Positions 9,842 to 64,000 are shown, counted from the stretch's first letter. The stretch: DNA of 64,000 bases from IMGVR_UViG_3300042544_001590:1-64000; one strand, 5' to 3'. Notes: generated from the sequence alone by a model not told the origin. A program made the numbers and translations.

Positions 9842-10522
9842 ATGACGAATCTTAATTTACCCGTGCTATTGGTCGGGGATACACATGGAGATTGGGATGC
9901 ACTCTTCCGCAAGCTGGAATACCTACAAATAGAAGATTGCGTTCTCCTTCATGTGGGCGATATCGGTATTGGATTTAAATCTCCTGATAAACAACATCGG
10001 GAGATCGAGCTTCTAAACAACCGTTTCAAGAAGCGTAATATTCAATTCAAAGGGTGTAGGGGTAATCATGATGACCCCAAATACTTCCTTGGTAGTGTCA
10101 TCCATTCCAATTTTGAATTGATTCGTGATTACTCTTATCAGAAGTTCAATGGGGAGCGTTTCCTATTCGTCGGGGGTGCCGTGAGTATTGATCGTCGTAT
10201 GCGAGTCCCCAACATGTCATGGTGGGAGGATGAAGCGTTTGTATTGAAGCCAGAACTTGTGGATAAGGTAGATGTGTTGATAACACACTCAGCACCTCAA
10301 TGGATTGGGGATTTTCAAAAATCTGGGATCGCCGGATGGTGTGAGAAAGACCCTACGCTTTGGGAGGAATGTGTGAAGGAACGGGAAGATATTGCCAAGC
10401 TGATTGAACTTTGCGGGTGTAAGAAGCATCTCTGTGGGCATTTTCACCAGTCACATTTCGCTTCCCATAATGGGTGTGATAGTCGCATTTTGGATATTTT
10501 AGAAATAGTGGAACACCGATAA
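9842..10522 (+). CDS. Metallophosphoesterase
   Basis: GDTHG, HVGD, RGNHD, THSAP, GHFH. Confidence 0.88.
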   Translation: MTNLNLPVLLVGDTHGDWDALFRKLEYLQIEDCVLLHVGDIGIGFKSPDKQHREIELLNNRFKKRNIQFKGCRGNHDDPKYFLGSVIHSNFELIRDYSYQKFNGERFLFVGGAVSIDRRMRVPNMSWWEDEAFVLKPELVDKVDVLITHSAPQWIGDFQKSGIAGWCEKDPTLWEECVKEREDIAKLIELCGCKKHLCGHFHQSHFASHNGCDSRILDILEIVEHR

Positions 10523-11204
10523 AAACTAGAATACAATACGGACATGAAACACAAAATTGACGAAGAGATCGTCTTCAAAACCTACGATGATAATGCGCTG
10601 ATTCACTTTGAAGTCACGCTCTGTAAATTCCCATCCGAAAGAATCGGTTGTATGATCCATGGATTGCCTGATCACGGGGAGATCAAGGATTTGGAGACGC
10701 TAGAACGAATCATTGGATGTCTGCAAGCTGCTAAAAAGAAATGGAAAACATTATGACCAATCTTCAATACATCAAAAAGCCATCCAAAAGACGGCAAGCT
10801 GAAGACGCTATCCTAGCTGAGAATGCTTTTAAAGATAACAAATGTGGGGAATATGATCCGAAGATCAACCCCCACGAAGAAGGTATTCGTCACGATAGGT
10901 TTAAGCGATATTACGAAGGAATCCATCGCAAACACGTTGAATATGAGCCGATCTTTCGAGACTTGTGTGAGGTCTATGGATTTGATCCTGAAAAACATTA
11001 TGCATATTGAAAGTTATAAAAACAAACTCATCAAGCATATTGATGACGCAGGAGATTTCGTCGTCAGCGATGATGGATACATTTATTTCTTTCCCGAGAA
11101 ATCAAATGGATACTTATCGGCTCATCAATTGCGGTTTATTGCGGATGAGTTGGACAAGCGCAACAAGCCTTGGGATGATAGCATTACGGAATACTTTAAT
11201 GAAA

Positions 11205-11573
11205 ATGAAAACACTACTAATTCTACTATTGACAATTAACCTTGGACTCTCCCAAGAATACGGAATCGCATCCCATTACTCAGTCAGAACAAATGGGGGG
11301 ACGCACACGGCAAGCGGAATTCCCCTGAGAGATGACGCATACACATTTGCCCATAAAACGCTACCGTTTGGTACGATTGCCAAAATCACCAATCTATCCA
11401 ATGGTAAGAGTGTGATGGTTCGATGTATAAATCGCGGGCCATTTATCAGGGGGCGTATCGTTGACCTTTCCCAAGCTGCTGCCTCCAAGTTGGGATTCCT
11501 GAAAAACGGGATTGTCAAGGTGCGGGTTGATGTGGTCAAGAGGGGAGACGGGAAGACCTATTTTAAAAACTAG
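11205..11573 (+). CDS. RlpA-like double-psi beta-barrel protein (septal lytic transglycosylase family) with signal peptide
   Basis: GIASHY, TASG, AHKTLPFGT, NRGPFIRGRIVDLSQAAA; hydrophobic MKTLLILLL start (true start downstream of ORF-track start). Confidence 0.85.
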   Translation: MKTLLILLLTINLGLSQEYGIASHYSVRTNGGTHTASGIPLRDDAYTFAHKTLPFGTIAKITNLSNGKSVMVRCINRGPFIRGRIVDLSQAAASKLGFLKNGIVKVRVDVVKRGDGKTYFKN

Positions 11574-11587
11574 GTTACAATACGGAT

Positions 11588-14500
11588 ATGAAGCAACCTA
11601 GAAAATTAACGCCCCCAAAAAAGGACGAACGACAATCCATTTACGTGGAAACTAAAAGCACTTGTACCCACGATTATCATGATGGTAAACGATTTGGTGA
11701 TTGGGAAAAGACGTATTCCAATAAAGTTGAGAAAATTTCCAGAAATAAGGATTTGTTGAATAAATGGAATTTTGAAGAATATAAGGTGCCGGATGAAACT
11801 TATGCTGCGTCCACACTGTATTTGGTTGTGGTGACTTATAGCTCTGGTGATTCCTTCGGGAGAAGCGAGGGAAACACATCCGTTGCGTATATCACAGAGA
11901 ATTCTGGGGAAGCCTTGGAAATTAGGGATATGATTAATGTTGGAAAAAAACCTTCCAAGGACGATCAAAAATATCAACATGGGGGATATGCACCATGGGA
12001 CGGACATTTTGAGAGAGTTAGCGATGTTGATATTGTGTTCCTTCCAGTGATGGGTTAAAAACTAGAATACAATACGGATATGAATCAACCAATAGATAAA
12101 ACAGGTGTTCACCGAACCCATTGCTGCTCAAGACATGGGTGTAAGTATGGGGAAGATAATTGTCCAGTAGTTACGGGTGAAGTTATTCAGGAATACCCTT
12201 GCGAGTATTGTGAGGAAGACCCCGCTCCAATATATCAAGTCCACTATATTCAAACTTATTTGTATTACGATAATGATAATTATCTATGTAGTAGTGATGA
12301 TGGTTCATTGGAAGAATATCTTTGTGCTGATTCCATCGAGGAGCTTTATGAGAAGATGGCAAAATGTTTGGTGGATTGGAAGATCACTGGAGAAGAAAGA
12401 TGTAAAAATGACAGTTTTGGGCTTTACGCAAAGGATACTTTTGATGTGGAATTTTCCCCCATTTATATCTATGTTGATGAATACTCCTCAGAGAAATTAA
12501 AAGCCACTAAGACCTATCAGGAAATTGGAGTTGCGCGAGACATCGCCAAGAAAAAACGCGAGGAGAAAGAAAAAGCTGATGCTCTTCGTAGGGCTGAAAA
12601 TGCAAGAATCCTAAAAGAAAAGGAAGAGAAAGCAATTTACAATAGACTCAAAAAGAAATACGAAAAATCATGAACGAACCGATCAAATACGAAAATTTGG
12701 GTGCTGAAATCTTGGCATTGCTTCGATCCAAAGCTGATGCAAAATGGGAATACTATAATCCTCACTTCTTAGTAGCAATTGCCGAAACAATTCAAGATTA
12801 TTATCAATTGGAAGACGAGGTTGTATGGGATTGGATTCAGGATATGGCGGGAGCATAAAATTATGATTAAATTAACAAAAATAGATATTAATCCCAACAG
12901 TGAAGTGATTCAAGCTTCCAATGTTGAGGAATACCGCATTGACCAAGAGCGTGGCACATGGGGTCAATTCTTTGAAGGAAAATCTCCTCCCGTGGACTAT
13001 TGGATCGTGGGAGAGCTTATTGGAGAAATCCAAGTTGGGAAGGCTATTCTCATTGACCGTTGGAATCGCAATGGGGTGGTGATTCGGGGAACCATGCATA
13101 CATCTGAAGTGAAGAAGCTTGAGGAGAACGATGGAGTAACCTATATCACAACCGCAAACAGTCTGTATAAGATGGAGCAAGTGGATGATGAGGATATTTT
13201 GAATTATGAACGAGAAATGCTTCAACTGCAATCGTGATGCCGTATGGTCTTACATGCCGGGAGCGGAATATGCTTGTGATGAATGCGTTCCCCGTGGATG
13301 CTCATGTAATTTTGAGCCAAAGGATGGGGATTGGGAAAATGAAGACCCTACAAATTGGGAAGAACGTGTGGGGGAAGATGGGAGAAAATACCCATGCTGC
13401 GAATGGATGACTTTCGAAAAATGAAAAAGAAATTAATCAATAACGAACAGGAATATAGAGAATTTGTATTCCTACTTCTCAATCATCATGATATTGATAT
13501 TTGGGAAGGTTGTGATATGGATCGACTTAACAGGGCGTTTGACATGTTTGACTCGCAACCCACGGGAAAGATGAGCGAAGAGCAATCAGAATTGTTGAGA
13601 TATTATTTTGAGTGTAAGGACAATCCCAAGCTAAATGAATTAACAGAACTCAAGGAATCCCTTGAATATATTGAAACGTATTATCTTGAGCAGTGTTTCG
13701 GCGTTGTCATCAAACATGACTGTTGGGATACTGATGAAGATGGTAATGATGTTGATGAAGATGGGAATATTATACCCGATGACTCATCCACTCCAGAAGC
13801 TCTAGTATTTGAAGATTGGGTGGGGGGATTAACATATCCATTTCTGATTGTTTATTGGTTCGCCAGCGGTTTTGATAGACTTGGAAAAAATTCAATCTGC
13901 GTTTTAGATTTTGTCGAGTTGAAAGATTTTAAAAACTAGGTTACAATAACCCCATGCACAAATTTATCAAAACAGACGATTGGCAATACATTTTTGACAA
14001 TTATGAATCGGTATATCTCGATGGGTTGAAAGGGAGATTCCTGATCCGTAGTTGGAGAATCGATGAGAACAGTCTTCATGATGGTTTGAATGACATGGCA
14101 AGAGCCTACCAAACCGCTCAACGCCAAGACAGGGAATGGGATGAGAGGGTGTGGTTTCCGTTTCTGGATGAGATCAAGGCAAGGGCTGTTGATAACAAGG
14201 TGATTCTCCATGCCAAACCCACCCATGAATATGGGGGAAAACAAGATCAATGGTGGGAATATGAATATTCAAACACCAGCCCTCGTTATGGGTGGGGTTA
14301 CTCCTTCAATTGGGTTGGAGAACCCGAAGAAAAGATTAATCACGATTTGGGACAAAAGCTTTATGAATTGGATCGCTATCAAAGGAAATTCGGAAATCGT
14401 GTGTTCATGCTTCAAAAGCTGCTTGAGAATTATCTGTTGAAATATGTCTATCGTATCTATAATTACGAATGGCTTGACAAGAACCAATTCTCCGGTAAGA

Positions 14501-14622
14501 TTGTGAAAATCACCTTGCGGGGGGATGAATATTGGTATCGTATTACCACAAACAGAAAAGGTGTGCCTGTGTGGGATAACTTTATCTGGCAATCAAATCA
14601 AACGGAGGAAATTAATCTATGA
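11588..14622 (+). CDS. Run of hypothetical proteins (11588-12058, 12080-12673, 12670-12858, ~12863-13237, 13206-13424, ~13421-13939, 13954-14622)
   Basis: Tightly packed + strand ORFs, several starting at module +1 and ending in the next module. Confidence 0.7.
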
Positions 14623-15311
14623 ATTACAAAATATTAATGGATGAAGACGAATTGGATCGTTTTATTGAATGGTTGCCCGATTTGGAAGAACATGAGACAA
14701 TATACAATGCGTTGTTCACAAGGAAGAAGTATAGTGTCTTATCAACGCATCCTTGGATCAAGGCTGATAAAAACCATATTCGTAGATTTACTTCCAATAA
14801 GGAACGACTAAAGGATAAAATCAAGCAACTTGAATGTCCTTTGGGGTCATATGTGGTAAAAGGTAAAGGTGGTGAAGGGTTTGTAGTGCCTCAAGAAAGT
14901 TTGGTATTATACTGTAGCCCCAATGCCCGTGATCTATGGAAAGCCACCATCCAAGGCGCAATTGACCTTATGAAAGTGGTGCAATGCCAAGGCAAGAACA
15001 GCAATCCCCATCAGGAGATTCTATCCACCATCCAAAGGACTGCTTCCAAGAAAAGGATTGTCACGTTCGATGTGGATGAGAAGAATCAGAACGTTCTGGA
15101 TCGCTTCACCGATGTTTGCGGCAAAGCTGTGGACGTTGTGGAGACGCGAGGTGGTTATCACTTCCTAGTCCATCCCAAGGAGATGCCCAAGAACACCAAA
15201 TGGCACCAGACGCTATCGGAGGTAAGTGATGTCACAGGTGACGCTTTACTTCCAATTCCCGGAACTTTTCAGGGAAATTTTTGCCCTCGAATGATTATTA
15301 ATAACCATTAA
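14619..15311 (+). CDS. Hypothetical protein with primase-polymerase-like motifs
   Basis: FDVD ... VETRGGYHFL resemble AEP/PrimPol motifs I and II. Confidence 0.35.
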   Translation: MNYKILMDEDELDRFIEWLPDLEEHETIYNALFTRKKYSVLSTHPWIKADKNHIRRFTSNKERLKDKIKQLECPLGSYVVKGKGGEGFVVPQESLVLYCSPNARDLWKATIQGAIDLMKVVQCQGKNSNPHQEILSTIQRTASKKRIVTFDVDEKNQNVLDRFTDVCGKAVDVVETRGGYHFLVHPKEMPKNTKWHQTLSEVSDVTGDALLPIPGTFQGNFCPRMIINNH

Positions 15312-15367
15312 CCTATGTTCGGTTCTTTTTTAGGTGGATAACCCAGTTTCGAGATTAAATACTCTTA

Positions 15368-16186
15368 ATGAAGAGTATAAAATATCCCGAAAAAGCTGGA
15401 ATTTATAAATTAACCTGTAAAACGAGTGGAAAATTCTATATAGGGAAATCAATAAATATAAGAGATAGAATAAAACGACACGAAAAATCAGCCAAAGACC
15501 TTAAAAATAAATGTCGTATAGTAAAAGCTATAAGAAAATATGGGTGGGACGATTTTGAAGTTGAAATATTGGAAATTTTTGAAGATTTTAATAGAGAATT
15601 TGATGATGCAAAATTATTTTTAATAGAATCTGATTATATAACCAAGCTCAATGCAACTGATGAAAAAGTTGGGTATAATATCTTAACTTGTAATTCTGGT
15701 AAAAACGGGATGAAACATACTGATGAAACAAAGGAAAAACTTAGAAAAGCTAATTTGGGAAAAAAACACAGCGAAGAAACTAAAAAAATGATGTCTGAGA
15801 AATTTTCCGGTGAAAACCATCCGATGTGGGGTAAACATTACACTAAAGAAGCTTTGGTCAAAAAGTCTGGTGAAAATTCATGTTGGTATGGAGTAAAGGG
15901 GGAATCCCACCCTACTTATGGGCGCAAACACACACCAGAAGCTATAAAAATATTAAAAGAAAAAAGACAATTACAAGACACAACACCTTTCAAGAGAAAA
16001 ATAAAACAAATCAATTTAGAAAATGGTGAATGTGTTAAAATATGGGATAGTATTAAAGAGGCTGCTATGTTTTTTGGTGTGAATCCGACTTCCATATCTG
16101 AAGTGTGTAGTAAGAGGAAAAAAGGAAATAGTGTGACAAAAAGATGTAAGGGGTATGGTTGGGAATATTGCGATGTTAAAAACTAG
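15368..16186 (+). CDS. Free-standing GIY-YIG homing endonuclease with NUMOD3 repeats and C-terminal NUMOD1-like HTH
   Basis: AGIYKL...FYIGKS..R...H, GYN, repeated KHT/SEETKxK and GENHPMWGK; AT-rich; TAAATA 6 nt before ATG. Confidence 0.92.
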   Translation: MKSIKYPEKAGIYKLTCKTSGKFYIGKSINIRDRIKRHEKSAKDLKNKCRIVKAIRKYGWDDFEVEILEIFEDFNREFDDAKLFLIESDYITKLNATDEKVGYNILTCNSGKNGMKHTDETKEKLRKANLGKKHSEETKKMMSEKFSGENHPMWGKHYTKEALVKKSGENSCWYGVKGESHPTYGRKHTPEAIKILKEKRQLQDTTPFKRKIKQINLENGECVKIWDSIKEAAMFFGVNPTSISEVCSKRKKGNSVTKRCKGYGWEYCDVKN

Positions 16187-16457
16187 AATACGATAACAAC
16201 AAAATTATGGAGAAATTAGTGTTAAGATATTATTGGTATATCCCGTATGAAGCTGGTGGTGAAGTAAATCATCCATTTGAATACGAATCCAAGGAACAGG
16301 CATTTGTAGATTTTATGGAGCTACGAGAAGACGCTGAATGGGATTTTGAATTTTTGGGGCAAATATTTGATGTGAATGATACTGAAGACGTTCAATTCTT
16401 TACTTTGGAAGAATGGTTTGAAAGATACAAGCTTAAAAACTAGATTACACTGATTCC

Positions 16458-16895
16458 ATGAAAATTGAAATCACCACGGAGGAGAAACAGAAAATTCTCA
16501 AATTCTCCACAGACATCAGACTAAAATTTGATGATGGGGAAGTTGAACCCATTCATAATTCAAAGGAATCCAAAGATTTTGTTCGTGAATTTCTAAAGAG
16601 TCGTGGAATCGGAAAACCGAGGGTTTATGAACAGGGAATCTATGCTTTTGGTGATGTTGGGATGCACACTGACAATCTCTCCCCAAAATCTGCAATGACC
16701 ATGTGTTTATTGATTTCCGGTAGTGGTAAATTGTTCGCTTGGGATGGTAAAAAGGTAAATGAATGTCGTGTCAACAAAGGAGATGGTGTTATTTTCGATT
16801 TCAATCTCCCCCACTCATTTGAAGCTGATAAAACATGCCAAGCATTTCTAGTGGACATTCCAAAAAAATATAAGAAAAATTTACTGAATGAGTGA
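16458..16895 (+). CDS. Cupin / 2OG-Fe(II) oxygenase-like protein
   Basis: MHTD ... GDGVIFDFNLPHS (HxD...H). Confidence 0.5.
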   Translation: MKIEITTEEKQKILKFSTDIRLKFDDGEVEPIHNSKESKDFVREFLKSRGIGKPRVYEQGIYAFGDVGMHTDNLSPKSAMTMCLLISGSGKLFAWDGKKVNECRVNKGDGVIFDFNLPHSFEADKTCQAFLVDIPKKYKKNLLNE

Positions 16896-17991
16896 TATGA
16901 AACTCCCCGACACTGAACAATTTAATTTTAAAGATGTCACCATTGCTGGGGATGACTGTTGGCTGATTACACCATCCAATATGGCTACCAAATGGACTGA
17001 CGACAATGCACGATTTCGTTCATGTATTGTTCGTAAGTCGGATAACTTTGTAGTGTCGCAAGGATTTTCCAAATTTACCAACTTTGGGGAGAAGCCTGAT
17101 TTTCAACCATGGGATAATTCATGGAAGATTGAAGCAATACACAAATTAGACGGAAGTCTTTTGATCGTTTCAAAGTATAAAGGGGAACTTATCATAAGAA
17201 CCCGTGGAACTGTTGATGCTCGTCAAATGGCTAATGGTCATGAGATTGATCTTCTTATAAAGAAATATCCATTCTTTTTCAATTTCTTCACCAATCATAC
17301 TCCCCCAACAATGACTCAATCTATATTGTTTGAGTGGACTACCCCCAAAAACATAATTGTGATCAGAGAACATGAAACTCCCACATTGACATTAGTTGGT
17401 GTTGCATCACATGATGTATATGAAACATATTACGCTGGTCAAGAATGGTTGGATGATTTCGCCAAAGTATATGGTCTTACCCGTCCTGAAAAGTATGAAT
17501 ACAATTCCATTGAGGAGTGCATCCTTGATGTATCTGCTTGGAAAGGAAAGGAAGGAGTGGTTTTATACTCTCCCAATGGTCAAACATTAAAGAAAATCAA
17601 AGCAAGCCTCTATTGCGAACTTCATAAAATCGCAACGGGAATGCGAACCATTTCCAATGTGCTTGATGTGTTCATGGAGTCTCCCCGATTTGTGGAATAC
17701 CAAGATTTTTATAATTTCCTCTGTAACTCACTTGATTTTGAAATCGCGGAACGTGTCAAAGATGATATCGCCAAAATCACGGAAGCATACGGCAAATTCA
17801 TCCATTCCGTCAACACCATTGAACGTGCCATGGGATACATCTCCAAGCTGGACTCCCGTAAGAAGCAAGCAATGGCTATTCAGGAGCATTGGGACGGCTG
17901 GATGGTTCCGGTTAGCTTTTCATTGCTTGACAACAAGCCAATCGATGATAAGCTGGTGAAGAAATCAATGGAGAAGCTACTGAATCTATGA
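16888..17991 (+). CDS. RNA ligase 1 (T4 Rnl1-like)
   Basis: KFTNFGE, KLDGSLLI (motif I), FEW, KEGVVL (IV), KIK (V). Confidence 0.8.
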   Translation: MSDMKLPDTEQFNFKDVTIAGDDCWLITPSNMATKWTDDNARFRSCIVRKSDNFVVSQGFSKFTNFGEKPDFQPWDNSWKIEAIHKLDGSLLIVSKYKGELIIRTRGTVDARQMANGHEIDLLIKKYPFFFNFFTNHTPPTMTQSILFEWTTPKNIIVIREHETPTLTLVGVASHDVYETYYAGQEWLDDFAKVYGLTRPEKYEYNSIEECILDVSAWKGKEGVVLYSPNGQTLKKIKASLYCELHKIATGMRTISNVLDVFMESPRFVEYQDFYNFLCNSLDFEIAERVKDDIAKITEAYGKFIHSVNTIERAMGYISKLDSRKKQAMAIQEHWDGWMVPVSFSLLDNKPIDDKLVKKSMEKLLNL

Positions 17992-18276
17992 AATTGGAAC
18001 AATTACTAAAAACAACACCAGAGACGCTTGCAGTGGAACAACATGCTGCTCTCAAGGAACATGTCATCAAGGTGTTGGAATCAACCCTTCAAGCGGTGAA
18101 GGATGAGTATTATAGCGCAATCCAAGAATTAACCATTGATTCTCCTGCCGGAGATGGATATGGTTGTAACAACAATTTCATAAATTTTGGATATAATGAA
18201 AAAGACCCACTTGATATTTGCGATGTCATGGAACGGTTGATTGAATTGAAAAAGATTGCAAAGAAAAAATAATATT

Positions 18277-21969: not shown

Positions 21970-22010
21970 ATAAGTATTTAGTATATAACACGTTATTTTT
22001 TGAAATAGTG

Positions 22011-22038: not shown

Positions 22039-22059
22039 GATAGCATAATAAATAAAAAA

Positions 22060-56400: not shown

Positions 56401-57598
56401 GAAAATTCATGATAAGCTGATTTTCCGAGTGGGGGTGGAAGAGGTTCATAGTCGATTCCAATTTGATCTTTACGATGCCCTGTGCCGAGCTTGCAACCCT
56501 TAAAAACTAGACCATAATTACGCCATGACCTACCAAGAGAAAGACAATATCCGGGAAGCAATCGAGTGGGATGGTTTCCAATGCATCATGCTGGGAACCG
56601 TATCCAAAGCGGGTATCCAAAGGCGCATGGATGGGAGCTTGGTGAGCGTATCAAATCCAAGGCAACCGGATACCAAGAGACTGGAAACCTTTGCCATCAC
56701 CGGACAATGGTTGTTTAAAAACTAAAACATAATAAGACCATGACGAAACACAAGCTGCCAACGATCAAGGAAATTGCAAAGCTTCTCATGCATTGCAAAA
56801 AATATATCCATGTTGATTCCCGTGCCTTTGACGACGACGATACGCCTTCCATGCAAATCACAATTGGAATCAACACGGAAAGCGGGGAATGGGGATATCA
56901 AACGGGGGACAATAGCTTCACGGGGGGAGCATATCTTTATCCAACGTGGGGAGTGGGATATCTCTTTCGGAATTCCAATTGTCGGGAAGTTGCCAAGGAA
57001 ATTCTGGCGGATGCCGAAAGCTGCCTGTATTAAAAACTAAACCATAATAAAGCCATGCCTTACTTACTACTGATTGAATGGGGAAATTGTGATAAGACTT
57101 ACGAATCTTTCCAATTCTTAAAAGATGCTAAACACGCCTTTGAATCCCATAAACATGAGGAGAATGTGGAATTTATGGAATTGGTGATCATTGGGGAGAA
57201 TGTGGAAAGCTGGTCAAATCCCGATTGTTCCCCTGAATCAGACTTTTAAAAACTAAACCATAATAAAGCCATGACAAACGAACAAATCGAATTTTCCCGA
57301 AGGAACGGAATTTGAATGTTTCTGATAAAAACTAGATTAAGATTTAACCATGACCTACAAAGCAATCTCAAATCCCCTGTGGAAGCTCAAGGATGAATTT
57401 GCCCATCTACTGCTTCCCAAGCACGTTTCCTTTCATGGTGCAATGCCTTCCCCTGCGGAAGCTTATGAAGTGATTCACAAGCCATCCATGGAAATCAATG
57501 ATCGGGGAAGAATCACCTATTCCAATTACTTCTACGGGAAGATTCTGGAAACGATGGAGGAAGCCCAAGCGGTGGCGGAAAAGCTGAATAACCGATAA
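41424..57598 (+). CDS. Array of roughly 60 small hypothetical genes, most with their own module (named members listed separately)
   Basis: ATG 24 nt after module T (e.g. 44988, 47831, 49072, 52229, 53017, 56740, 57350); stops usually in the next module. Confidence 0.75.
41939..42193 (+). CDS. Small Cys/His-rich repeat protein
   Basis: Three repeats of CxxC...G.GC..SP...H.(H). Confidence 0.7.
   Translation: MSQCRYCQSQSYGLGCPASPWGRHEHFNNEKKCEFCGGTGYGSGCTLSPVKKHRHGSGKNKCRWCGNTAMGMGCIHSPSGFHEK
43689..43761 (+). ncRNA. Structured RNA or 5' leader starting at module +1
   Basis: GTTCTCTC/GAGAGGAC closing AGGGG/CCCCT and TCTCC/GGAGA helices. Confidence 0.5.
46240..47274 (+). CDS. DUF932-family protein
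   Basis: MAHEIE..AWH, YEILQN, SAGTL, TSHDG, RTVCANTL, HTKN. Confidence 0.85.
   Translation: MAHEIEIGTDRVITYGARAWHLLDENHQTPLTKEILNPLFIPYLEGQANVNIDGVEVPLEGWKTIVADIRNIEDIEGDFRPVHVASDKYEILQNELLFDALQDALDSINYKIVSAGTLSGLKNFFVSVEFDGESNINLPDGSECKAFFSLFTSHDGTKNANYYDTTHRTVCANTLRSSFEAKGNQGFRISHTKNASIRISNMAEIVNNTLLGRRQFEEKMAELYSVECDLSKAERFVAGYLADKTKTEEKLSTRSLNQMAEIVSLAWNGSGNRGGNMFYLAQGATEFWTRGNGTGGSNKDLGRKAYSAEFGLGMENKRNFVSALVNPVEREKLIKRGDLVLTAG
47285..47356 (+). ncRNA. Compact pseudoknotted element ending in ACCA
   Basis: CTTCCG/CGGAAG, TCCCG/CGGGA, AATGCT/AGCATT, CGGG/CCCG, then ACCA and a T run. Confidence 0.45.
50189..50674 (+). CDS. SprT-like zinc metalloprotease
   Basis: TAGQA, TVPHEMAH, PHGREW, C-terminal CGC...CTCC. 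Confidence 0.85.
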   Translation: MTDTKQRIHKTIQHFAEVARIKGYEFPKCVIDYSLKGATAGQAFRRSHKMRFNLALAERHMDEFLSSTVPHEMAHILQFKHYPHSKPHGREWDHFCRVLTGETMPRCHSYDVTGIERTRKVKKYLFACGCRQHTVSKTIVNRIMEGKTYTCTCCKGKIKAV

Positions 57599-57619
57599 AA
57601 ACTAGCGCACAATCATAGC

Positions 57620-57688
57620 ATGAACGAAACAATGACCGAAGCGGATATCCAAGACATGATTGACTATCACAACGGGATCGTTAAATGA
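57620..57688 (+). CDS. 22-aa peptide MNETMTEADIQDMIDYHNGIVK
   Basis: ATG at module +1; paralog at 58993 differs synonymously. Confidence 0.55.
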   Translation: MNETMTEADIQDMIDYHNGIVK

Positions 57689-57694
57689 TACTTT

Positions 57695-57769
57695 GGTGCG
57701 GTAGTCCAGCGGCAGGAGACAAATGACTTAAAATCATTACAGGGTCGGTTCGAATCCGACTCGCCACTC
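57695..57769 (+). tRNA. tRNA-Leu(UAA), short variable loop, defective acceptor (possible pseudo-tRNA)
   Basis: AATGA-CTTAAAA-TCATT, GTCGG-TTCGAAT-CCGAC; acceptor needs a bulge; no CCA. Confidence 0.65.
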
Positions 57770-57790
57770 TTTATAAAACTAAATGAAAAT

Positions 57791-57868
57791 TGTCCGGTAG
57801 CTCAAAGCGGTGAGAGCACTTGCCTTATAAGTGAGAGGTTGCGGGATCGACACCCGCCCGGACTACCA
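57791..57868 (+). tRNA. tRNA-Ile(UAU)
   Basis: Cloverleaf, loop CTTATAA, encoded CCA, T-loop ATCGACA, U1-U72 mismatch. Confidence 0.85.
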
Positions 57869-57900
57869 TTTTTTAAAAACTAAAATAAGATAACACCACG

Positions 57901-58557
57901 ATGACAACAATTGAATTTTGCAGCAAATACTCTCTTAGTGAAATGTGTGAGGAAGGACGGAATTTCGCTTTGAGTCTTGAAACAATGTCTCAAGTTTGGG
58001 AAAATTGTAGAAATCCGAGTTGGCTTTTCTGGATTCTCGACAAATGCAAGCCGCTGGATAAGGAACAATCCGTGAGATTGTCCATTGCATTTGCGGAAAC
58101 TTGTCTTATTAATGTTCCCGATGGAGAAACTCGCCCCAAACTTGCGATTGAAGCCTCAAAAGCATGGCTTGATAATCCATGCGAAGAAACAGAGTTAGCA
58201 GCAACATCAGCAGCAGAGTCAGCATCAGTAGCAGCATCAGCAGCATGGTCAGCACGGTCAGCAGCAGAGTCAGCAGCACGGTCAGCAGCATGGTCAGCAT
58301 GGTCAGCACGGTCAGCAGCACGGTCAGCAGCAGAGTCAGCAGCATGGTCAGCAGCAGAGTCAGCAGCATGGTCAGCAGAGTCAGCAGCAGAGTCAGCAGC
58401 ACGGTCAGCAGCACGGTCAGCAGCATGGTCAGCACGGTCAGCACGGTCAGCAGCAGAGTCAGCAGCATGGTCAGCAGCAGAGTCAGCAGCACGGTCAGCA
58501 GCACGGTCATCGCAATGCAATACGATACGGGAAATGATTTCAAACCCCTTCGGTTAA
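57901..58557 (+). CDS. Protein with low-complexity SA(A)W/R/E repeat tract
   Basis: GTCAGCA(GCA) 9/12-bp units ~58195-58510; N-terminal RP..AIEA..AWL domain. Confidence 0.75.
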   Translation: MTTIEFCSKYSLSEMCEEGRNFALSLETMSQVWENCRNPSWLFWILDKCKPLDKEQSVRLSIAFAETCLINVPDGETRPKLAIEASKAWLDNPCEETELAATSAAESASVAASAAWSARSAAESAARSAAWSAWSARSAARSAAESAAWSAAESAAWSAESAAESAARSAARSAAWSARSARSAAESAAWSAAESAARSAARSSQCNTIREMISNPFG

Positions 58558-58992
58558 AAACTAGAATAAGATAACACCATGACATTAAACGAGATCAAAA
58601 CAGCGGTTCGGGACGGTAAAAAAGTGTGCTGGGCAACCCCGATCTACGAAGTGATCAATCCGATCAAATCACCAACTTTGGATGCCAACGAAGAGCAATG
58701 GCTGATTCGGTGCAAGGCAAACGGTTCTTGCATTGGTTTGACACACCAAGACAATATCACGATGAACGGCGAGGAGAGCGAATTCTTCATCGCATAAAAA
58801 CTAGCCTATAATCACACCATGCAAGAAACAATGTCAATGAGAGTCCGGTCTGATAGGTGGGAATGGATTATGAAATGGTGTGAGGAAAACGGAAAGGATT
58901 GGAGGATTGAGGGAGATTGCCAAGAAGCAAGGATGGCATGGATCAAGTTCATCCAAGAAACCAAACCATAAAAACTAGCCTATAATCATCCC

Positions 58993-59061
58993 ATGCCTGA
59001 CAATATGTGCGAATACGATATCCAAGACATGATTGACTATCACAACGGGATTGTTAAGTAG
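58993..59061 (+). CDS. 22-aa peptide MPDNMCEYDIQDMIDYHNGIVK
   Basis: ATG at module +1; paralog of 57620. Confidence 0.55.
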   Translation: MPDNMCEYDIQDMIDYHNGIVK

Positions 59062-59070
59062 AATTTAAAT

Positions 59071-59147
59071 GGTTGCGTAGCCCAACCGCTAGAGGCCACA
59101 GACTTAAAATCTGTTCAGTATGGGTTGGAATCCCATCGCAACTACCA
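59071..59147 (+). tRNA. tRNA-Leu(UAA), short variable loop, C19-G56 swap
   Basis: GGTTGCG/CGCAACT-A-CCA; ACAGA-CTTAAAA-TCTGT; T-loop TTGGAAT. Confidence 0.85.
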
Positions 59148-59173
59148 TTTTTTAAAAACTAAAACACAATAAC

Positions 59174-59464
59174 GCTGAAGTGCTGGCACCCGCTGTCGAA
59201 AAAACTACAACGAAGCCCCAAATGTCTGATACCGAAAAACTTGCGGAAGCCACTGATAGCGGGTTGCTCCAGCCACGCCTTGTTCGGCTTCTTCCGTGTC
59301 CGTTCTGCGGTTCCGAAGCTCGCATTGGACAAGGCGACGGATGGCCGGGGGAAACCGTGGTCGAGTGCAGCAATGACGAAAACTGCCGCGCTCAAATGTC
59401 CTGCATCTGGGGCGAGAAGAATGAAACCGAACTCTGGAACGCCCGCGCAAATCCTCAGCCGAAC
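59174..59464 (-). mobile_element. Single integron-type cassette (attC 59171-59288) inserted in a module spacer
   Basis: AAC-GCTGAAGT-GCTGG-CACCCGCTGTC ... GATAGCGGGTTG-CT-CCAGC-CACGCCTT-GTTCGGC; far end GCCGAAC; excision restores CACAAT-AACAAC-ATG. Confidence 0.8.
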
Positions 59465-59626
59465 AACATGAAACAACTTGCAACTCTCGCCTTCTATGCG
59501 AAATACGCCGGATGGCAATCCTATCACAAGTCCATGCTTCCCCAAGTCAAAGCCCTAACACGCAAGGGATTTCTGGAAATGAATGAGCATGGGCAAGCGC
59601 GGTTCACGGGAAAGTGTCAAGATTAA
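59222..59626 (+). CDS. Lar-family restriction-alleviation-like protein fused in frame to the resident gene (ATG 59468)
   Basis: LLPCPFCGSEA...VEC....C...WNAR. Confidence 0.65.
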   Translation: MSDTEKLAEATDSGLLQPRLVRLLPCPFCGSEARIGQGDGWPGETVVECSNDENCRAQMSCIWGEKNETELWNARANPQPNNMKQLATLAFYAKYAGWQSYHKSMLPQVKALTRKGFLEMNEHGQARFTGKCQD

Positions 59627-59642
59627 AAAACTAGCCTAGAAT

Positions 59643-59717
59643 GCGCTTGTAGCTCAGTGGTTAGAGCGAGCCTCTCATAAAGGCTGGGTCGATGGTTCAA
59701 TCCCATCCGAGCGCACC
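59643..59717 (+). tRNA. tRNA with CAU anticodon (elongator Met or Ile2)
   Basis: GCGCTTG/CGAGCGC, AGCCT-CTCATAA-AGGCT, ends ACC. Confidence 0.88.
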
Positions 59718-59737
59718 TTTAAAAACTAGCATAGAAT

Positions 59738-59814
59738 GGATGCGTAGCTCAACTGGATAGAGCAATTCCCTTCTAAGGAATAGGTTGTGGGTTCAAATCC
59801 CGCCGCGTCCACCA
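59738..59814 (+). tRNA. tRNA-Arg(UCU)
   Basis: GGATGCG/CGCGTCC-A-CCA, ATTCC-CTTCTAA-GGAAT. Confidence 0.92.
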
Positions 59815-59838
59815 TAAAAACTAAACCATAATCACACC

Positions 59839-62800
59839 ATGACCCACAAGGAACACCTGCTCAAAACACAATTCGGATTCATTGCCACCAAGGAAGATGA
59901 GGAAAAGCTTATCGCAGAGGATCGCTTCACACCCGTTCTGGTGCGCTGTGGCAATGGAAGGTTCCGTTGCGCGGTGCAGGATTTGGCACACTTCGTCAAG
60001 GTGATCAATGCCAGCAAAGAGGACTATGTGAGGGACGCATCCGTGACCCTATAAAAACTAAACCATAATAACACCATGTTCGACAAACCAATTGCAACCC
60101 GCCCTTACTCATCCCATCCTGATGATTCCTATCTCCAAGTGGTTCTCCACAAGAACTTCAAGGGGGAATATGTCACCCATATCCAGAATCTCCATACAGG
60201 CGGATTCGTGCATGGCCATTACTTTGGCAAGGACACGGATGCGCTGGAAAAGGCAACCCAAGACTTCAAGAACCGATAAAAACTAAACCATAATCACACC
60301 ATGACCAAGAAATACCTGATAATCAAGCTGGAAGCCAAGGAAAGCCAAATTCCCGATGGTTACAATATGACAACCCGGACGGAATATTTCGGGGTTACAA
60401 CCGGATATCCCTTTCCCCATGACACTCTGGAAGAGGCGGAAGAGGAATTGGCACGGAATATTTACAAGTTTGAGCAATACACGATCATTCCGGTCTATAC
60501 CTACGAATAAAAACTAGATTAAGATAACACCATGACCGAAACACAAGCAAGGCAAGCTCTGGATGCGTGGACAATCAAGACCTATCTGGATTGGGTCAAT
60601 AATTACCTGACCATTGAAAAGATGGCAAGCGATTACAATCTCTCCCCAAAAGGAATGAAAGCAATCCTTGAAAAAGGCAAGGAACTTTATGAAGGATAAA
60701 AAACTAGAATAAGATAAATCCATGCATTACACAATCAATATCTCCCTCAATGGGTATCACTTATTTGCAACAGCGGATCATAGCTTGTGCGATACCCAAG
60801 AATACATCAGATGCTTCGCCATCTTGAAAGCGAAATTTCCTGAAAGCGAAGGATATAAAGTGGATGGAACCCTATGGAAGACAATCGGTAACTCGGTGAA
60901 TGATTCCGGTGATAAAAACTAGAATAAGATAAAGCCATGCAATACAACCTACTGATTGATTGGGGAAACGGAGAGAAAAGCTTTCAGGAATTTGACAACC
61001 TGATCCTAGCTCAAAAAGCAATGGAAAACTCCAAGGACAATCCCGAAATCGAATTTATCATTCTGGTAAAGAGCGAAATGCTGGGATTCTGGTCAAACCC
61101 ATGCAGCGGAGAAGAGGACTGATAAAAACTAGCGTAAGATCAGGACATGAAACAATTCAACCTATTCTGGAAGTTCTCAGGTATTAAGAACTACGACCCC
61201 CACCAAACCATCACCGCAAGGAATCTCCCGGAAGCCTTGGAAATAGCTGCAAACGACCATGGTTTCCTGATTAGGGGAGAAACCCTAAAACGCAACGGCA
61301 ACCGTAGAATTGAATTTTGGGGATATGCCGGGGAAGGAACGATGAAAGTCCCCGCACCGATTATCCAAGGGGTGATTGCCAATGCTTAAAAACTAGCGTA
61401 AGATCAGGACATGACAATCAACGGAATCCAAATTAAGACAACCCTTTCCAACACCAAAAAACCGGATTGGAGCAGGGGCAATCATAACCATTACAAGGTG
61501 CGGATTTCCAAGGGAAGGAATAGCGTATCCTTTGATTACTTTGACAGCATCCACAATACGCAAAATAATGAGGAAGCGGACATGAAAGATATCCTTTTCT
61601 GCTTTGCATCCGATGTGAGCAACGGGCGGGAGGAATTCGATGATTCCATGATGACTCCCAAGCAATACCGAGAATGCAAGCGTGTGGCCAATGCTGCGGA
61701 AAGGATGGGCATTTCCAACGAAACACTGGCGGAATGGTGGCAGCTTTAAAACAAAGGACGCGGGAATCAGTGTGACAAAATGACGCACCTCCACCTAAGT
61801 CTCTGATAGTGTGACAAAATGACGCACTCAAGGTGCGACAAAATGACGCACTGTGACAAAATGACGCACTTTAGGAATAGAAGGATACGAAAGGATAGGG
61901 GAAATAACTTTTAAAAACTAGCGTAAGATTTCAGCATGACGAAATTACTCGACAAAGAACACGTGAAAGCAATGGTAAAAGCTCTGGAAAGCGCGGGCTT
62001 GCCTTTGGAAAAGGATTGGCAAAGCGGGACTGTTCGGGCATACATCAACGGCAAGGAAATCTTCGCCGCTCTGGAGAAGGGCAAGAACCAGCCTTGGATT
62101 GTGCGCCATGTTGATGATCTGTTCGCATAATGTTCCTAATCAGAATGTTCCTTGATATGACATAATCGACAAAGCCAAGTTATATCAAGAGGTTTGGAAT
62201 AATCTTTATGATGCATTTCCTCGCCTATCTCACCACATATACAATTTTCGCGCAATATCTTACCACGTTTTAAATATACATTTGCTGTTGATCGTGCATT
62301 AGCTTTCAATCGCTGAATATCACTAAGTTCTGAATGTTTGGTTCTATTGATTCGCATCCATTCAGCACGGCATGATTTACACCAACGTTGATTATTAACC
62401 CGCTCATTCACTTTACATTTATTACAATATGTCATAATAATACTTAGAATATTGTTCCACATTTGTATAGTGGAACAAGTGATGTTTAAAAACTAGCCTA
62501 GACTGATCACATGAAGGAACTGCCACCGTGCCACAAAGATTCCCCCCTCCATGATAAATGGCTTGTCATTGTCGCTCAAATGGAGGATGAGGGATGCGAT
62601 ACATCCGATGCCCAATCCATAGCCGATATTGAGGTGTTTAAAAACTAGATTAAGATTTAGCTACCAATACAACGCCGGAGCCGCTGCGGAGCGGAGTCCC
62701 CCGCAAAGGGACATATAAAAAAGCTTTTGTCGTTCGATTCCCGGATGCATACGGGATAGAGCAAGAGGACTAGCTATCCTTGGACAAGACGAAAGCGGAG

Positions 62801-64000
62801 GGTTCGAAACCTTCCTCGGGCTTCCTTTTCTTAAAAACTAAACCAGAATAACACCATGACGAGACAATATACAAACCGACTGCTGGAAATGATCGAAGAT
62901 GGTCTGCTTGACAAGGACAACGTGATCATGGCTTGTGTCAAATACATGTCGGAGGACGATGTGGAGGACATGATGAAATGCAACGAATTTCTGGAGGACG
63001 AAGAAGAGGAGGATGAGGACGAATAAAAACTAGCGTAAGATAGCCTCACCATGAAACGATACGCCATAAGATCAAAACAAAAGGAAATAGGATATATCAA
63101 ATTTACAGTTCCCACCATTGAAGTATTACATTTCAATTCTCCTTTCTTTCTTGGATCGTGGTGTGCTGACAATGGAACACTGTGGACATGTTTGGATGAT
63201 GGGAAAAACATTTTTGAGAATGAGAATGAAGCCAAGGAAAGATTGGCCGAAATCATCAAGGAATTGTTCGCTTAAAAACTAGACCAGAATAACACCATGA
63301 TAATCACATACACCGCAAGATACGCAGATGGTGAAAAAGTCACGTTCACGGGAAAATTCGATGACCTGAAAGACTTTGGGAATTTCGCTCACCGTGAGAG
63401 CAAAAGGCCGAATTACAATGGTGATATGTTCATCATCATTAGCATCGTTTAAAAACTAGCCTAAGATTATCGCACCATGAAACAACTCATCCTTGACACC
63501 CTCGCCGCGTTCTTCCTGTTCGCGTTCACTCCCATCGTCCTGTTCATCCTGATCGGATAACCTTTATAAAAACTAGCGTAAGCTCGTAGCACCATGAAAC
63601 TGAAAATAACAAGCACCGCACCAGTCGCAGTCGAAACCTATGTTGAGGGTAATATTGTCCTCGGGCATTTCGAGTACAACGAGGGTGATTCCGCCCTTGG
63701 GGTCAATCCCCACTTTGTCCTTGTCGATGAAGTGTCGGATGACTTCCCAATCCTTTGGGAAGGGCAGGAAGTGACCATTCACAACGGGTGGTTCATCTTC
63801 GATGACGTTCACTTCGGAGAAGTGAAATTCAAGTTCGCCGGATATTAAACCAACCCCGAAAGGGGTTCAATCCCCCTTATAAAAACTAGCCTAGACTGAT
63901 CTCGTAACCAACACCAACCAACACCATGACCAACAAACAAATCATCGCAAAATTCGTGCAAGGCGCAACCAAGGGCAAGAACAGCCTGAAAAGCATGTTC
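59839..64000 (+). CDS. Array of very small module-headed hypothetical genes (59839, 60076, 60301, 60532, 60722, 60937, 61147, 61411, 61936, 62511, 62856, 63051, 63297, 63477, 63594, 63926 partial)
   Basis: Each start follows a module, mostly at the fixed distance. Confidence 0.7.
61771..61869 (+). repeat. Four 18-bp direct repeats TG(T/C)GACAAAATGACGCAC in a non-coding gap
   Basis: Copies at 61771, 61810, 61834, 61852. Confidence 0.92.
62136..62435 (-). CDS. Small HNH endonuclease-like protein
   Basis: CNKC..CKSC, then CICG...HHKDYSKPLDITWLCRLCHIKEH; TAAGTA 5 nt before ATG. Confidence 0.8.
   Translation of the reverse strand: MTYCNKCKVNERVNNQRWCKSCRAEWMRINRTKHSELSDIQRLKANARSTANVYLKRGKILRENCICGEIGEEMHHKDYSKPLDITWLCRLCHIKEHSD
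62674..62825 (+). ncRNA. Unknown ~150-nt RNA with tRNA-like T arm and acceptor-like closure
   Basis: GCCGGAG/CTCGGGC, GAGGG-TTCGAAA-CCTTC, GCTTTTGTC/GACGAAAGC, GTCCC/GGGAC, TCCCG/CGGGA; follows module at 62639. Confidence 0.6.

What the first reader, a model, noticed from the sequence alone, without database searches (positions are those of the whole stretch)
10520..63282. Upstream genes terminate inside the module (zero-gap packing, many proteins end in KN)
Seen: more than 50 ORFs stop at the module TAA (e.g. 10522, 12058, 28867, 33063, 57033) or at its TAG/TAA seven bases later, giving C-terminal KN (11573, 13939, 16186, 26923, 36147, 41409, 49644, 55030). Third-frame cases read IKTKP*/IKTKGY*. 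tRNA-Arg CCA abuts the next module exactly. Inference: incoming or trimmed genes borrow their stop from the module, as expected if the module is the junction at which units are joined or deleted.
Basis: partly seen in the sequence, partly recalled or inferred. Interest (0 to 1): 0.6.

Follow-up and report, generated by a model that had tools for sequence, protein, structure and literature searches.

The report
Genes end inside leaderless promoter modules
In this 207-kb T4-like freshwater phage nearly every small gene is preceded by a 27-bp promoter-like module placed so close to the previous gene that the previous protein takes its stop codon (and sometimes its last residues, K-N) from the module; this is a consequence of an unusually compact, apparently leaderless gene layout, and the modules also mark where gene cassettes are swapped between related phages.

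Summary
The module is (T/A)TAAAAACTA(G/A)-NN-TAnnnT-N5-(C/T)-ATG. There are 96 copies in the window and 118 in the genome, all but one on the + strand. In 10520-63282, 64 of the 83 modules with a confident upstream ORF supply its stop: 40 at TAA, 24 at TAG/TAA giving ..KN. Random positions give 0.5.

Orthologues in related IMG/VR contigs show the tails are module-encoded. The same protein ends ..SE* with its own TGA, ..NE* at the module TAA, or ..KN* at the module TAG. Another ends ..DKN* in relatives and ..IKTKP* here. A third runs 27 aa past all seven orthologues to a module stop.

The module looks like a -35-less promoter whose -10 sits exactly 6 nt before ATG, implying leaderless mRNA. No transcript data were available to confirm this. 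The same geometry, with stops inside the promoter, recurs at T4-late-like TAAATA-N5-ATG sites, at canonical TTGACA promoters in a distant relative, and in a relative with a different box.

So stop-borrowing comes mainly from compaction. Modules are also preferred cassette junctions, as in the PeSLs of T4-type phages. I rate it a new variant of a known kind.

The parts
7571..63910 (+). Array of 96 co-oriented modules, (T/A)TAAAAACTA(G/A)-NN-TAnnnT-N5-(C/T)-ATG. It continues to about 74 kb in the genome, with 5 more copies at 157-165 kb.
   Evidence: 113 of 118 have A-11 and T-7. 78 have exactly 6 nt between the -10 and ATG, and the base before ATG is then always a pyrimidine (C 62, T 16).
10519..10546 (+). 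Module whose TAA (10520-10522) is the stop of ORF 9842-10522. The next gene starts at ATG 10544.
11563..11590 (+). Module whose TAG (11571-11573) stops ORF 11043-11573 (tail ..TYFKN). The next gene starts at ATG 11588.
   Evidence: The L018 orthologue ends ..IKRTKK* with its own stop and no module.
28864..28891 (+). Left copy of a pair of identical modules flanking a 1.6-kb, three-cassette block (28866-30494) that is absent from relative L019.
30492..30519 (+). Right copy of the identical module pair. The L019 junction is the left flank of 28866, one module, and the right flank of 30494.
35074..35640 (+). Gene ending ..RRINE* at the module TAA. Orthologues end ..RTIKN* (module TAG, L019), ..RTIGE* (module TAA, L014) and ..RTISE* (own TGA, no module, L012/L013).
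38301..38762 (+). Single ORF that reads in frame through a decayed internal module (38555-38582) with CAA in place of TAA. The distal part is a stand-alone cassette in L018 and L022. The internal module is further decayed in L019 and lost by a 12-nt in-frame deletion in L014.
41928..41941 (+). T4-late-like element TAAATAA-N4-ATG. Its TAA stops gene 41671-41934 (..EIK*). In L014 the same gene runs into a module instead and ends ..EIKN*.
42455..42697 (+). Third-frame case: the gene reads through the box and stops in the -10 region (..IKTKGY*). Orthologues in L017 and L018 end ..YLKN*.
48769..49047 (+). Gene with its own TGA directly abutting the module (TGA|TAAAAACTAG). The same TGA is kept in L017 and L018, where no module follows.
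49072..49644 (+). Gene of 190 aa that runs about 27 aa past the end of all seven orthologues (163-178 aa, own stops) and ends ..FDKN* at a module stop.
53436..53648 (+). Third-frame case ending ..LLIKTKP*, with the stop being the TAA of the CCATAAT -10. Orthologues end ..LLDKN* (L013) and ..LLNKN* (L014).
53504..53641 (+). Small ORF ending ..ADKN* here but ..DE*, ..TE* or ..AG* at the module TAA in L019, L014 and L013. This is a frame switch at the junction.
59643..59717 (+). tRNA-Met. It begins directly after the TAGAAT of a module and is followed by the next module.
59738..59814 (+). tRNA-Arg. It begins directly after TAGAAT, and its CCA (59812-59814) abuts TAAAAACTAA of the next module (59814-59841).
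20635..22017 (-). The only long reverse-strand gene in the array. It lies exactly between two + strand modules (boxes at 20600 and 22022). The module at 20600 has no gene of its own.
15368..16186 (+). GIY-YIG-type homing endonuclease gene ending with a KN tail at a module TAG.

Best explanation
The module is a compact promoter.

Anatomy. An invariant box TTAAAAACTA(G/A) occupies about -25 to -15, where a spacer would normally be, and no -35 element is present. Two bases later comes a sigma-70-type -10 hexamer, TAnnnT. Exactly six bases after that comes the ATG, preceded by a pyrimidine. Transcription should therefore start on the A of the ATG and give a leaderless mRNA.

Why stops fall in the module. 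There is no 5' leader, no Shine-Dalgarno sequence and no terminator, so the only non-coding DNA between genes is the promoter. The preceding gene runs into it.
- In one frame it meets the box TAA, which adds no residue.
- In a second frame it meets the box TAG/TAA, which adds K-N.
- In the third frame it needs its own stop just upstream, or stops in the -10 (IKTKP*, IKTKGY*).

Small indels slide the gene end against the box, so orthologues differ in their last residues.

Recombination. About a hundred unrelated genes carry the same sequence of roughly 27 bp at both ends. Homologous recombination between modules can therefore delete, insert and exchange whole cassettes without breaking genes, as in the PeSLs of T4-type phages.

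Shown here: the anatomy, the stop statistics, the non-homology of the tails, the cassette indels at modules, and the same geometry in three other promoter types.
Inferred: promoter activity, the start site at the ATG, and what recognises the box (possibly a phage-encoded factor).
For: Promoter-like anatomy:
- -10-like conservation, with A-11 invariant in 71 of 71 and T-7 in 70 of 71; no conservation at -35.
- 78 of 118 modules have exactly 6 nt to the ATG, all with a pyrimidine before the A. Another 17 have a 3-nt ACC leader.
- No Shine-Dalgarno enrichment anywhere in the genome. No excess of -35/-10 promoters or terminators in the array.

Same geometry in other promoter types:
- TAAATA-N5-ATG occurs 48 times against 6.2 +/- 2.5 in shuffles, with a sharp spacing peak. 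The genome has a gp55-like late sigma factor.
- Canonical TTGAC(A/T)-N16-18-TAnnnT-N5-7-ATG occurs 15 times in this genome and 14 times in the 21-kb relative L010. There the upstream ORF often stops at the TGA inside TTGACA.
- Relative L020 keeps the -10 and its 6-nt spacing but has a different box, AATAGAATTAAG. 6 of 11 upstream ORFs stop at its TAG.

Stops are a by-product of the box:
- Both box stop triplets stay invariant when unused: 47 of 47 and 32 of 32.
- Tails are not homologous among orthologues.
- Loss of the TAA fuses two ORFs in frame, after which the module decays.

Modules as junctions:
- Indels are bounded by identical modules, and block ends fall at modules.
- Only one paralogous pair exists among 102 module-driven genes, so modules did not spread by gene duplication.

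Background: the genome is a T4-like myophage, with DNA polymerase, portal, major head protein, tail sheath, terminase and baseplate wedge.
Against: - There is no transcript evidence. No RNA run holds the sequence, so neither promoter activity nor the start site has been observed.
- tRNA-Met and tRNA-Arg begin immediately after the TAGAAT hexamer. A start 7 nt downstream would fall inside the tRNA. These two modules must use the overlapping TAGCCT/TAGCAT hexamer, or the tRNAs come from upstream transcripts.
- The box position (-25 to -15) fits no known sigma-70 contact. No MotA or AsiA homologue was found.
- Breakpoints also occur at module-less gene boundaries, so modules are preferred junctions, not exclusive ones.
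Confidence: 0.7

Rival explanations
1. The module is first of all a translational stop-restart signal on polycistronic RNA. The box exists to end the upstream protein at a fixed 14 or 21 nt before the next AUG, so that 70S ribosomes can reinitiate without a Shine-Dalgarno sequence.
For: - The stop-to-start distances are fixed, and the genome shows no Shine-Dalgarno use.
- The stop-less frame is under-used: 14 against 56 and 36.
- No terminators lie between cassettes, so read-through transcripts are likely.
Against: - Only two of the three frames are stopped.
- Both stop triplets are equally invariant when unused.
- In L022 the last base of CTAN is often C or T, which removes the second stop.
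- L020 has both of its stops in one frame.
- The TAnnnT pattern and the pyrimidine-purine step at the ATG are hallmarks of transcription, not translation.
- This could still be a secondary benefit of the layout.
Confidence: 0.1
2. The module is the attachment or target site of a dedicated cassette-mobility system (integron-like or endonuclease-driven), and both the stops and the promoter resemblance are incidental.
For: - Cassette indels fall exactly at modules.
- The module-driven genes are unrelated to each other.
- An inverted cassette lies between two modules at 20635-22017.
- Homing endonuclease genes are present.
Against: - The strict co-orientation, the fixed distance to the ATG, and the -10 pattern are not explained by a recombination site.
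- Related phages show the same layout with ordinary TTGACA/TAnnnT promoters.
- Junctions carry identical repeats of about 28 bp, which is enough for general homologous recombination.
- No recombinase was looked for specifically, so this is not excluded.
Confidence: 0.08
3. The module is an RNA processing site. An endonuclease cuts long early transcripts just after the TAnnnT, releasing monocistronic RNAs with a 6-nt leader and mature tRNA 5' ends.
For: tRNA-Met and tRNA-Arg begin exactly after the TAGAAT hexamer. No terminators lie between cassettes.
Against: - In L022 and L017 the tRNAs begin 6 and 11 nt after the hexamer, so the abutment is not conserved.
- RNase P needs no such site.
- A relative has canonical -35/-10 promoters with the same -10-to-ATG spacing, which argues for transcription initiation.
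Confidence: 0.05

Closest known systems
PeSLs (promoter-early stem-loops) of T4-type phages (Arbiol et al. 2010, PMC2839356; Comeau et al. 2014, PMC4122927)
   Same: - Repeated regulatory cassettes in the hyperplastic regions of T4-like genomes, upstream of ORFans.
- They begin with the stop codon of the upstream gene and end at the start codon of the downstream gene.
- They border the insertions, deletions and replacements that distinguish related phages, through recombination between copies. Here the corresponding results are.
   Different: - PeSLs span about 100 bp and have an AT-rich region, a -35, a -10, a stem-loop terminator and a Shine-Dalgarno sequence.
- This module is about 27 bp with no -35, no stem-loop and no Shine-Dalgarno sequence.
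- It has an invariant box next to the -10, and the ATG sits at the predicted start site.
- The upstream stop lies inside the conserved core, not in a loose AT-rich flank.
-10-adjacent leaderless promoters (TANNNT a few bp before the ORF) of Deinococcus-Thermus (PMC12340547). From my own knowledge: also Actinobacteria and the middle/late genes of Thermus phage phiYS40 (Sevostyanova et al. 2007, cited in PMC12340547; not readable here).
   Same: A TAnnnT hexamer at a fixed short distance upstream of the start codon, no Shine-Dalgarno sequence, and often no -35. Here the corresponding results are.
   Different: - Here the layout is in a T4-like jumbo phage.
- It applies to three promoter classes at once.
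- It carries an 11-bp invariant box.
- No transcripts have been mapped.
T4 middle promoters (MotA box plus sigma-70 -10, with AsiA/MotA sigma appropriation). This comparison rests on my own knowledge.
   Same: A sigma-70-type -10 combined with a conserved box that replaces the -35. The box differs between related clades (TTAAAAACTAG against AATAGAATTAAG), as expected if it co-evolves with a phage factor.
   Different: The box lies at -25 to -15, not centred at -30. No MotA or AsiA homologue was detected. The recognising factor is unknown.

Membership tests
PeSL regulatory cassettes of T4-type phages | Sigma-70-like promoter with both -35 and -10 elements | tested here: not met
   The -10 is present (A-11 and T-7 invariant). 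There is no conservation at -35 and no excess of -35/-10 matches over shuffles: 50 against 39.7 +/- 6.
PeSL regulatory cassettes of T4-type phages | Stem-loop acting as terminator or attenuator | tested here: not met
   Only 14 or 21 nt separate the stop from the next ATG. Terminator-like sites number 25 against 18.7 +/- 4.4 in shuffles, and none lies at a module.
PeSL regulatory cassettes of T4-type phages | Many copies concentrated in variable regions, upstream of ORFans | tested here: met
   118 copies, 113 of them between 7.5 and 74 kb. Most downstream genes have no family match, and only one paralogous pair exists.
PeSL regulatory cassettes of T4-type phages | Copies border the indels and replacements between related phages | tested here: met
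   100 of 184 block ends fall inside modules, against 12.2 +/- 3.4. A 1.6-kb indel is flanked by identical modules. Breakpoints number 1.25 per module against 0.50 per module-less boundary.
PeSL regulatory cassettes of T4-type phages | Element runs from the upstream stop codon to a Shine-Dalgarno sequence and start codon | tested here: inconclusive
   The stop codon and start codon are present. There is no Shine-Dalgarno sequence: 3% of module genes have an SD-like word, against 8% background.
Leaderless -10-adjacent promoters | TANNNT hexamer about 6-7 nt upstream of the start codon | tested here: met
   113 of 118 have A-11 and T-7. 78 have 6-nt spacing.
Leaderless -10-adjacent promoters | Primary transcript 5' end at, or within a few nt of, the start codon | not testable with these tools
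   No RNA run holds the stretch, and contigs cannot show 5' ends.
Leaderless -10-adjacent promoters | AUG start and no Shine-Dalgarno sequence | tested here: met
   29 of 30 long module genes start with ATG. Other long ORFs use ATG 153, TTG 82 and GTG 40 times at the first candidate start. There is no SD enrichment.
T4 MotA/AsiA-dependent middle promoters | MotA and AsiA homologues encoded by the phage | tested here: not met
   No match to PF09114 or PF09010 at E <= 1.
T4-type late promoters (for the second motif, TAAATA-N5-ATG) | TATAAATA-like -10 element and a gp55-type late sigma factor | tested here: met
   48 sites against 6.2 +/- 2.5 in shuffles, with one sharp spacing. L024:1327-1776 matches phrog_234, late sigma factor, at E 1.9e-23.
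Integron-like or site-specific cassette systems | Dedicated integrase or recombinase acting at the repeat | not tested
   No recombinase search was made. Junction repeats of about 28 bp are enough for homologous recombination.

The most novel reading that the evidence does not exclude
A widespread clade of freshwater T4-like jumbo phages expresses essentially all its genes from leaderless transcripts.
- All three promoter classes (canonical -35/-10, a new box plus -10 class, and T4-late-like) are positioned to start on the A of the ATG.
- The box class replaces the -35 with an 11-bp element read by an unknown, clade-specific phage factor.
- Under a one-promoter-per-gene rule, the 27-bp promoter serves at once as stop codon, intergenic region, transcription start, translation start and recombination joint for about a hundred exchangeable gene cassettes.
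Probability: 0.45. Interest if true: 0.7.

Novelty: new variant of a known kind. Interest (0 to 1): 0.5.

Why it matters
- Gene calling. Gene finders that rely on Shine-Dalgarno sequences will mis-call starts in this clade, and C-terminal residues such as KN or IKTKP should not be read as conserved motifs.
- Evolution. The clade offers a minimal, sequence-defined version of PeSL-type modular shuffling. One 27-bp element supplies stop, promoter, start and recombination homology, so cassette gain, loss, fusion and decay can be read directly from metagenomes.
- Transcription. The invariant box next to an ordinary -10, which differs between sister clades, points to an undiscovered way of replacing the -35 contact. 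That is testable once a host or the RNA polymerase is in hand.
- Breadth.

Tried and rejected
- DNA similarity to isolated phages: none.
- Literature search for the box sequence: only chance hits. Searches for leaderless T4-like or jumbo phages found no precedent.
- Transcript evidence: no RNA run holds the stretch. Read laying was not used, because only contigs with next to none of the words were offered.
- Spread of modules by gene duplication: rejected. There is 1 paralogous pair among 102 genes.
- The box conserved because it is a stop: rejected. Unused stop triplets are equally invariant, and L022 tolerates C or T at the last position.
- Shine-Dalgarno-led internal genes as a contrast class: no SD enrichment in any class.
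- Host inference:
  - no WhiB;
  - homologues of the nucleotide-sugar epimerase are 37-45% identical and spread over many phyla;
  - canonical TTGACA/TAnnnT promoters argue against a Bacteroidota host;
  - the host stays unknown.
- A phage RNA polymerase: no single-subunit RNAP match, but the control rang nowhere, so this is inconclusive. The T4-like core and the gp55 homologue suggest the host polymerase is used.
- A possible chimeric module in L014 near window 44385: the similarity was too short to judge, so I dropped it.

Full report
**What the window is**

The window is the first 64 kb of a single-contig virus record of 207,489 bp with 39.4% G+C. The genome has a T4-like core:
- family-B DNA polymerase, about 29% identical to those of cyanophage and pelagiphage T4-likes
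- portal
- major head protein, tail sheath, large terminase and baseplate wedge
- a gp55-type late sigma factor next to an SbcD/gp47-like gene
- two RNA ligases, a CCA-adding enzyme and 13 tRNA genes

No isolated phage matches it at the DNA level. The source is freshwater.

**The module**

Aligning all copies gives (T/A)TAAAAACTA(G/A)-NN-TAnnnT-N5-(C/T)-ATG.
- AAAAACTAG occurs 71 times on the + strand of the window and never on the - strand.
- With the CTAA variant there are 96 copies in the window and 118 in the genome. Almost all lie between 7.5 and 74 kb, with five more at 157-165 kb.
- The box TAAAAACTA is invariant. The hexamer after it has the conservation profile of a sigma-70 -10, with A-11 in 71 of 71, T-7 in 70 of 71 and T-12 in 53 of 71. 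Nothing is conserved where a -35 would lie.
- In 78 modules exactly six bases separate the hexamer from the ATG, and the base before the ATG is then always a pyrimidine (C 62, T 16).
- Another 17 modules, clustered at 63-67 kb, have nine bases ending ACCATG. A few have longer C/A-rich leaders.

I took the longest open frame (at least 40 codons) that runs into each module. Of the 83 such modules in 10520-63282:
- 40 upstream ORFs stop at the box TAA
- 24 stop at the box TAG/TAA seven bases later
- 3 have a TGA abutting the TAA
- 11 have their own stop no more than 25 nt upstream
- 2 stop in the -10 in the third frame
- 3 read through

That is 64 of 90 modules, against 0.48 +/- 0.71 for random positions.

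The frame without a box stop is under-used (56, 36 and 14; p = 4e-6). Elsewhere in the genome long ORFs end in TGA about as often as in TAA (116 against 124), and TAG is rare (28). Next to a module, TGA appears only as TGA|TAA. The stops at modules are therefore not simply the genes' native stops.

**The tails are module-encoded, not homologous**

IMG/VR holds many relatives, at 74-85% nucleotide identity over shared genes, that carry the same module. Examples from orthologue comparison:
- Gene 35074-35640 ends ..RRINE* at the box TAA here. It ends ..RTIKN* at the box TAG in L019..RTIGE* at the TAA in L014, and ..RTISE* with its own TGA and no module in L012/L013. In L019 seven bases are missing and the box overlays the last two codons.
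- Gene 53436-53648 ends ..LLIKTKP* here and ..LLDKN* or ..LLNKN* in L013 and L014.
- Gene 42455-42697 ends ..YIKTKGY* here and ..YLKN* in L017 and L018.
- Gene 49072-49644 runs 27 aa past the end of all seven orthologues to a module stop.
- Gene 62511-62648 ends ..EVFKN* here and ..EVKN* in L013.
- Gene 48769-49047 keeps its native TGA both with and without a following module.

Among reciprocal-best pairs, 15 switch between the TAA and TAG classes, and many switch between a module stop and their own stop. That criterion is not met.

A natural experiment shows the box TAA really is the stop. At 38555-38582 the box reads CAA instead of TAA. The upstream ORF continues in frame, because the ATG is 24 nt from the TAA, into what is a stand-alone cassette in L018 and L022. 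In sister genomes that share the fusion the internal module is decaying: CTAG has become TTAG in L019, and L014 has a 12-nt in-frame deletion.

**What the module most likely is**

The anatomy is that of a promoter placed so that transcription begins on the A of the ATG. It has a -10 with invariant A-11 and T-7, a six-base discriminator and a pyrimidine-purine step at the start. There is no room for a leader, and the genome shows no Shine-Dalgarno enrichment.

Three independent comparisons support this reading.
1. The rest of the genome has a second motif, TAAATA-N5-ATG, present 48 times against 6.2 +/- 2.5 in shuffles with one sharp spacing. It sits upstream of structural genes on both strands. 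By the geometry of T4 late promoters (my own knowledge: TATAAATA at -13 to -6) this also puts +1 on the ATG, and a gp55 homologue is present.
2. The genome has 15 canonical TTGAC(A/T)-N16-18-TAnnnT-N5-7-ATG sites, several with TGn before the hexamer. The more distant relative L010 drives its small genes from 14 such textbook promoters in 21 kb, with the same -10-to-ATG distance.
3. Relative L020 keeps the -10 and its spacing but has a different box, AATAGAATTAAG.

The -10/ATG geometry is thus the constant, and the upstream element is exchangeable: TTGACA at -35, or one of two boxes at -25 to -15. A -10 hexamer a few bases before the ORF is an experimentally validated leaderless promoter layout in Deinococcus (PMC12340547).

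I could not obtain transcript data. Promoter activity and the start site are therefore inferred, not shown.

**Why genes end inside it**

With no leader, no ribosome-binding site and no terminator, the promoter is the whole intergenic region, and the preceding gene runs into it. This is not peculiar to the module:
- 16 of 41 upstream ORFs stop in the TAA triplets of the late-like motif.
- In L010 and in this genome, upstream ORFs repeatedly stop at the TGA inside TTGACA.
- In L020, 6 of 11 stop at the TAG of its different box.
- At 41928 the same gene end (..GAG ATT AAA) merges into a late-like TAAATAA here (..EIK*) and into a module in L014 (..EIKN*).

Both box stop triplets are invariant whether or not they are used (47 of 47 and 32 of 32). 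In L022 the last base of CTAN is often C or T. The box is therefore conserved for another reason, and its stops are used opportunistically.

**The junction idea**

The module is also where genomes differ.
- Against six relatives, 100 of 184 ends of homology blocks lie within the module, against 12.2 +/- 3.4 for random positions. Left ends pile up at the first base of the box and right ends at the ATG.
- The block 28866-30494 (three cassettes) is missing from L019. The junction is one copy of two identical flanking modules of about 28 bp.
- Only one pair of the 102 module-driven genes is paralogous, so the repeats did not spread by duplication.
- Breakpoints are 2.5 times more frequent per module than per module-less gene boundary, but they occur at both.

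This matches the PeSL model of T4-type phages, whose elements are also described as starting with the stop codon of the upstream gene (PMC2839356; PMC4122927). The present element lacks the defining -35, stem-loop and Shine-Dalgarno parts.

**Unresolved points**

- tRNA-Met and tRNA-Arg start directly after the TAGAAT hexamer. A start seven bases on would fall inside the tRNA. An overlapping TAGCCT or TAGCAT hexamer five bases upstream could place the start at tRNA position 1, or these tRNAs may come from upstream transcripts. In L022 a tRNA starts 6-7 nt after the hexamer, and in L017 it starts 11 nt after.
- What reads the box is unknown. No MotA, AsiA or single-subunit RNA polymerase match was found.
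- The host is unknown. The canonical TTGACA promoters argue against Bacteroidota.

**Verdict**

The stop-borrowing inference is supported. The recombination-junction inference is supported as a property of the modules, but it is not the cause of the stops. The cause is a compact, apparently leaderless gene layout shared by all promoter classes of this phage clade. It is a new variant of known kinds (PeSL-type cassettes and -10-adjacent leaderless promoters).

No alternative genetic code was used.

Noticed in passing
window 15356, 22049, 41928, 43769 (+) and 4435 (-); genome-wide on both strands (for example G000 94718-, 112995-, 180604-, 194562+): A second promoter-like motif, (C/T)TAAATA(A/T)-N4-ATG, resembles the T4 late promoter. 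It occurs 48 times against 6.2 in shuffles, with one sharp spacing that would also put the transcription start on the ATG. Late genes therefore look leaderless too.
   Followed up: partly
G000 outside the window (for example 104756-, 126068-, 139880+, 148627+, 197702+); L010 3678, 3912, 7079, 13537, 13897, 14123, 14384: Canonical TTGAC(A/T)-N16-18-TAnnnT-N5-7-ATG promoters, several with TGn before the hexamer, show the same leaderless spacing. The upstream ORF often stops at the TGA inside TTGACA.
   Followed up: partly
window 38301-38762 (internal module 38555-38582): Two cassettes are fused in frame through a module whose TAA has become CAA. The internal module is decaying in sister genomes (L019, L014). 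The distal 61 aa would also be made from the internal ATG.
   Followed up: yes
window 20598-22050: The only long reverse-strand gene in the array (20635-22017, 460 aa, no family match) sits exactly between two + strand modules. The module at 20600 has no gene and would transcribe antisense to it.
   Followed up: no
window 59626-59841: tRNA-Met and tRNA-Arg start immediately after the module hexamer TAGAAT, with an overlapping TAGCCT/TAGCAT hexamer 5 nt upstream. tRNA-Met encodes only CC of its CCA end, and the phage carries a CCA-adding enzyme (L001:12607-14133).
   Followed up: partly
window 7.5-64 kb and L001 1-4000: Module subtypes are regional: TACAAT hexamers at about 7-40 kb, CTAA-ACCATAAT at about 51-60 kb, TAAGAT at about 60-67 kb, and a nine-base spacing ending GCACCATG at 63-67 kb. 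This suggests local homogenisation or promoter classes.
   Followed up: no
window 46186-46242, 49636-49684, 44385-44423, 63881-63931: A few modules have 19-37-nt leaders rich in C and A (runs such as AACAACAAC) and no Shine-Dalgarno sequence. This hints at SD-independent initiation on unstructured leaders.
   Followed up: no
window 1-241 and the last ~150 bases of G000: A perfect 57-bp tandem repeat (4.2 copies at the start) is also present at the other end of the contig. The 'direct terminal repeat' call for this record may rest on this array.
   Followed up: partly
L020 (IMGVR_UViG_3300035034_000544), 16 sites: A sister clade replaces the box by AATAGAATTAAG but keeps the TAnnnT-N6-ATG. In L017 the box has six A's, and in L022 the base after CTA is free.
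   Followed up: partly
L023 2336-4435: A distant relative (31% aa identity) uses leadered starts: TATAAT/TATACT, then about 12 nt, then a purine-rich AAGAGAAAGAGA word 5-6 nt before the ATG. The leaderless layout is therefore clade-specific.
   Followed up: no
window 15368-16186; L002:4887-6572; L007:16817-18643: Three homing-endonuclease-like genes (one GIY-YIG and two HNH types). The first occupies a module-bounded cassette and has a KN tail.
   Followed up: no
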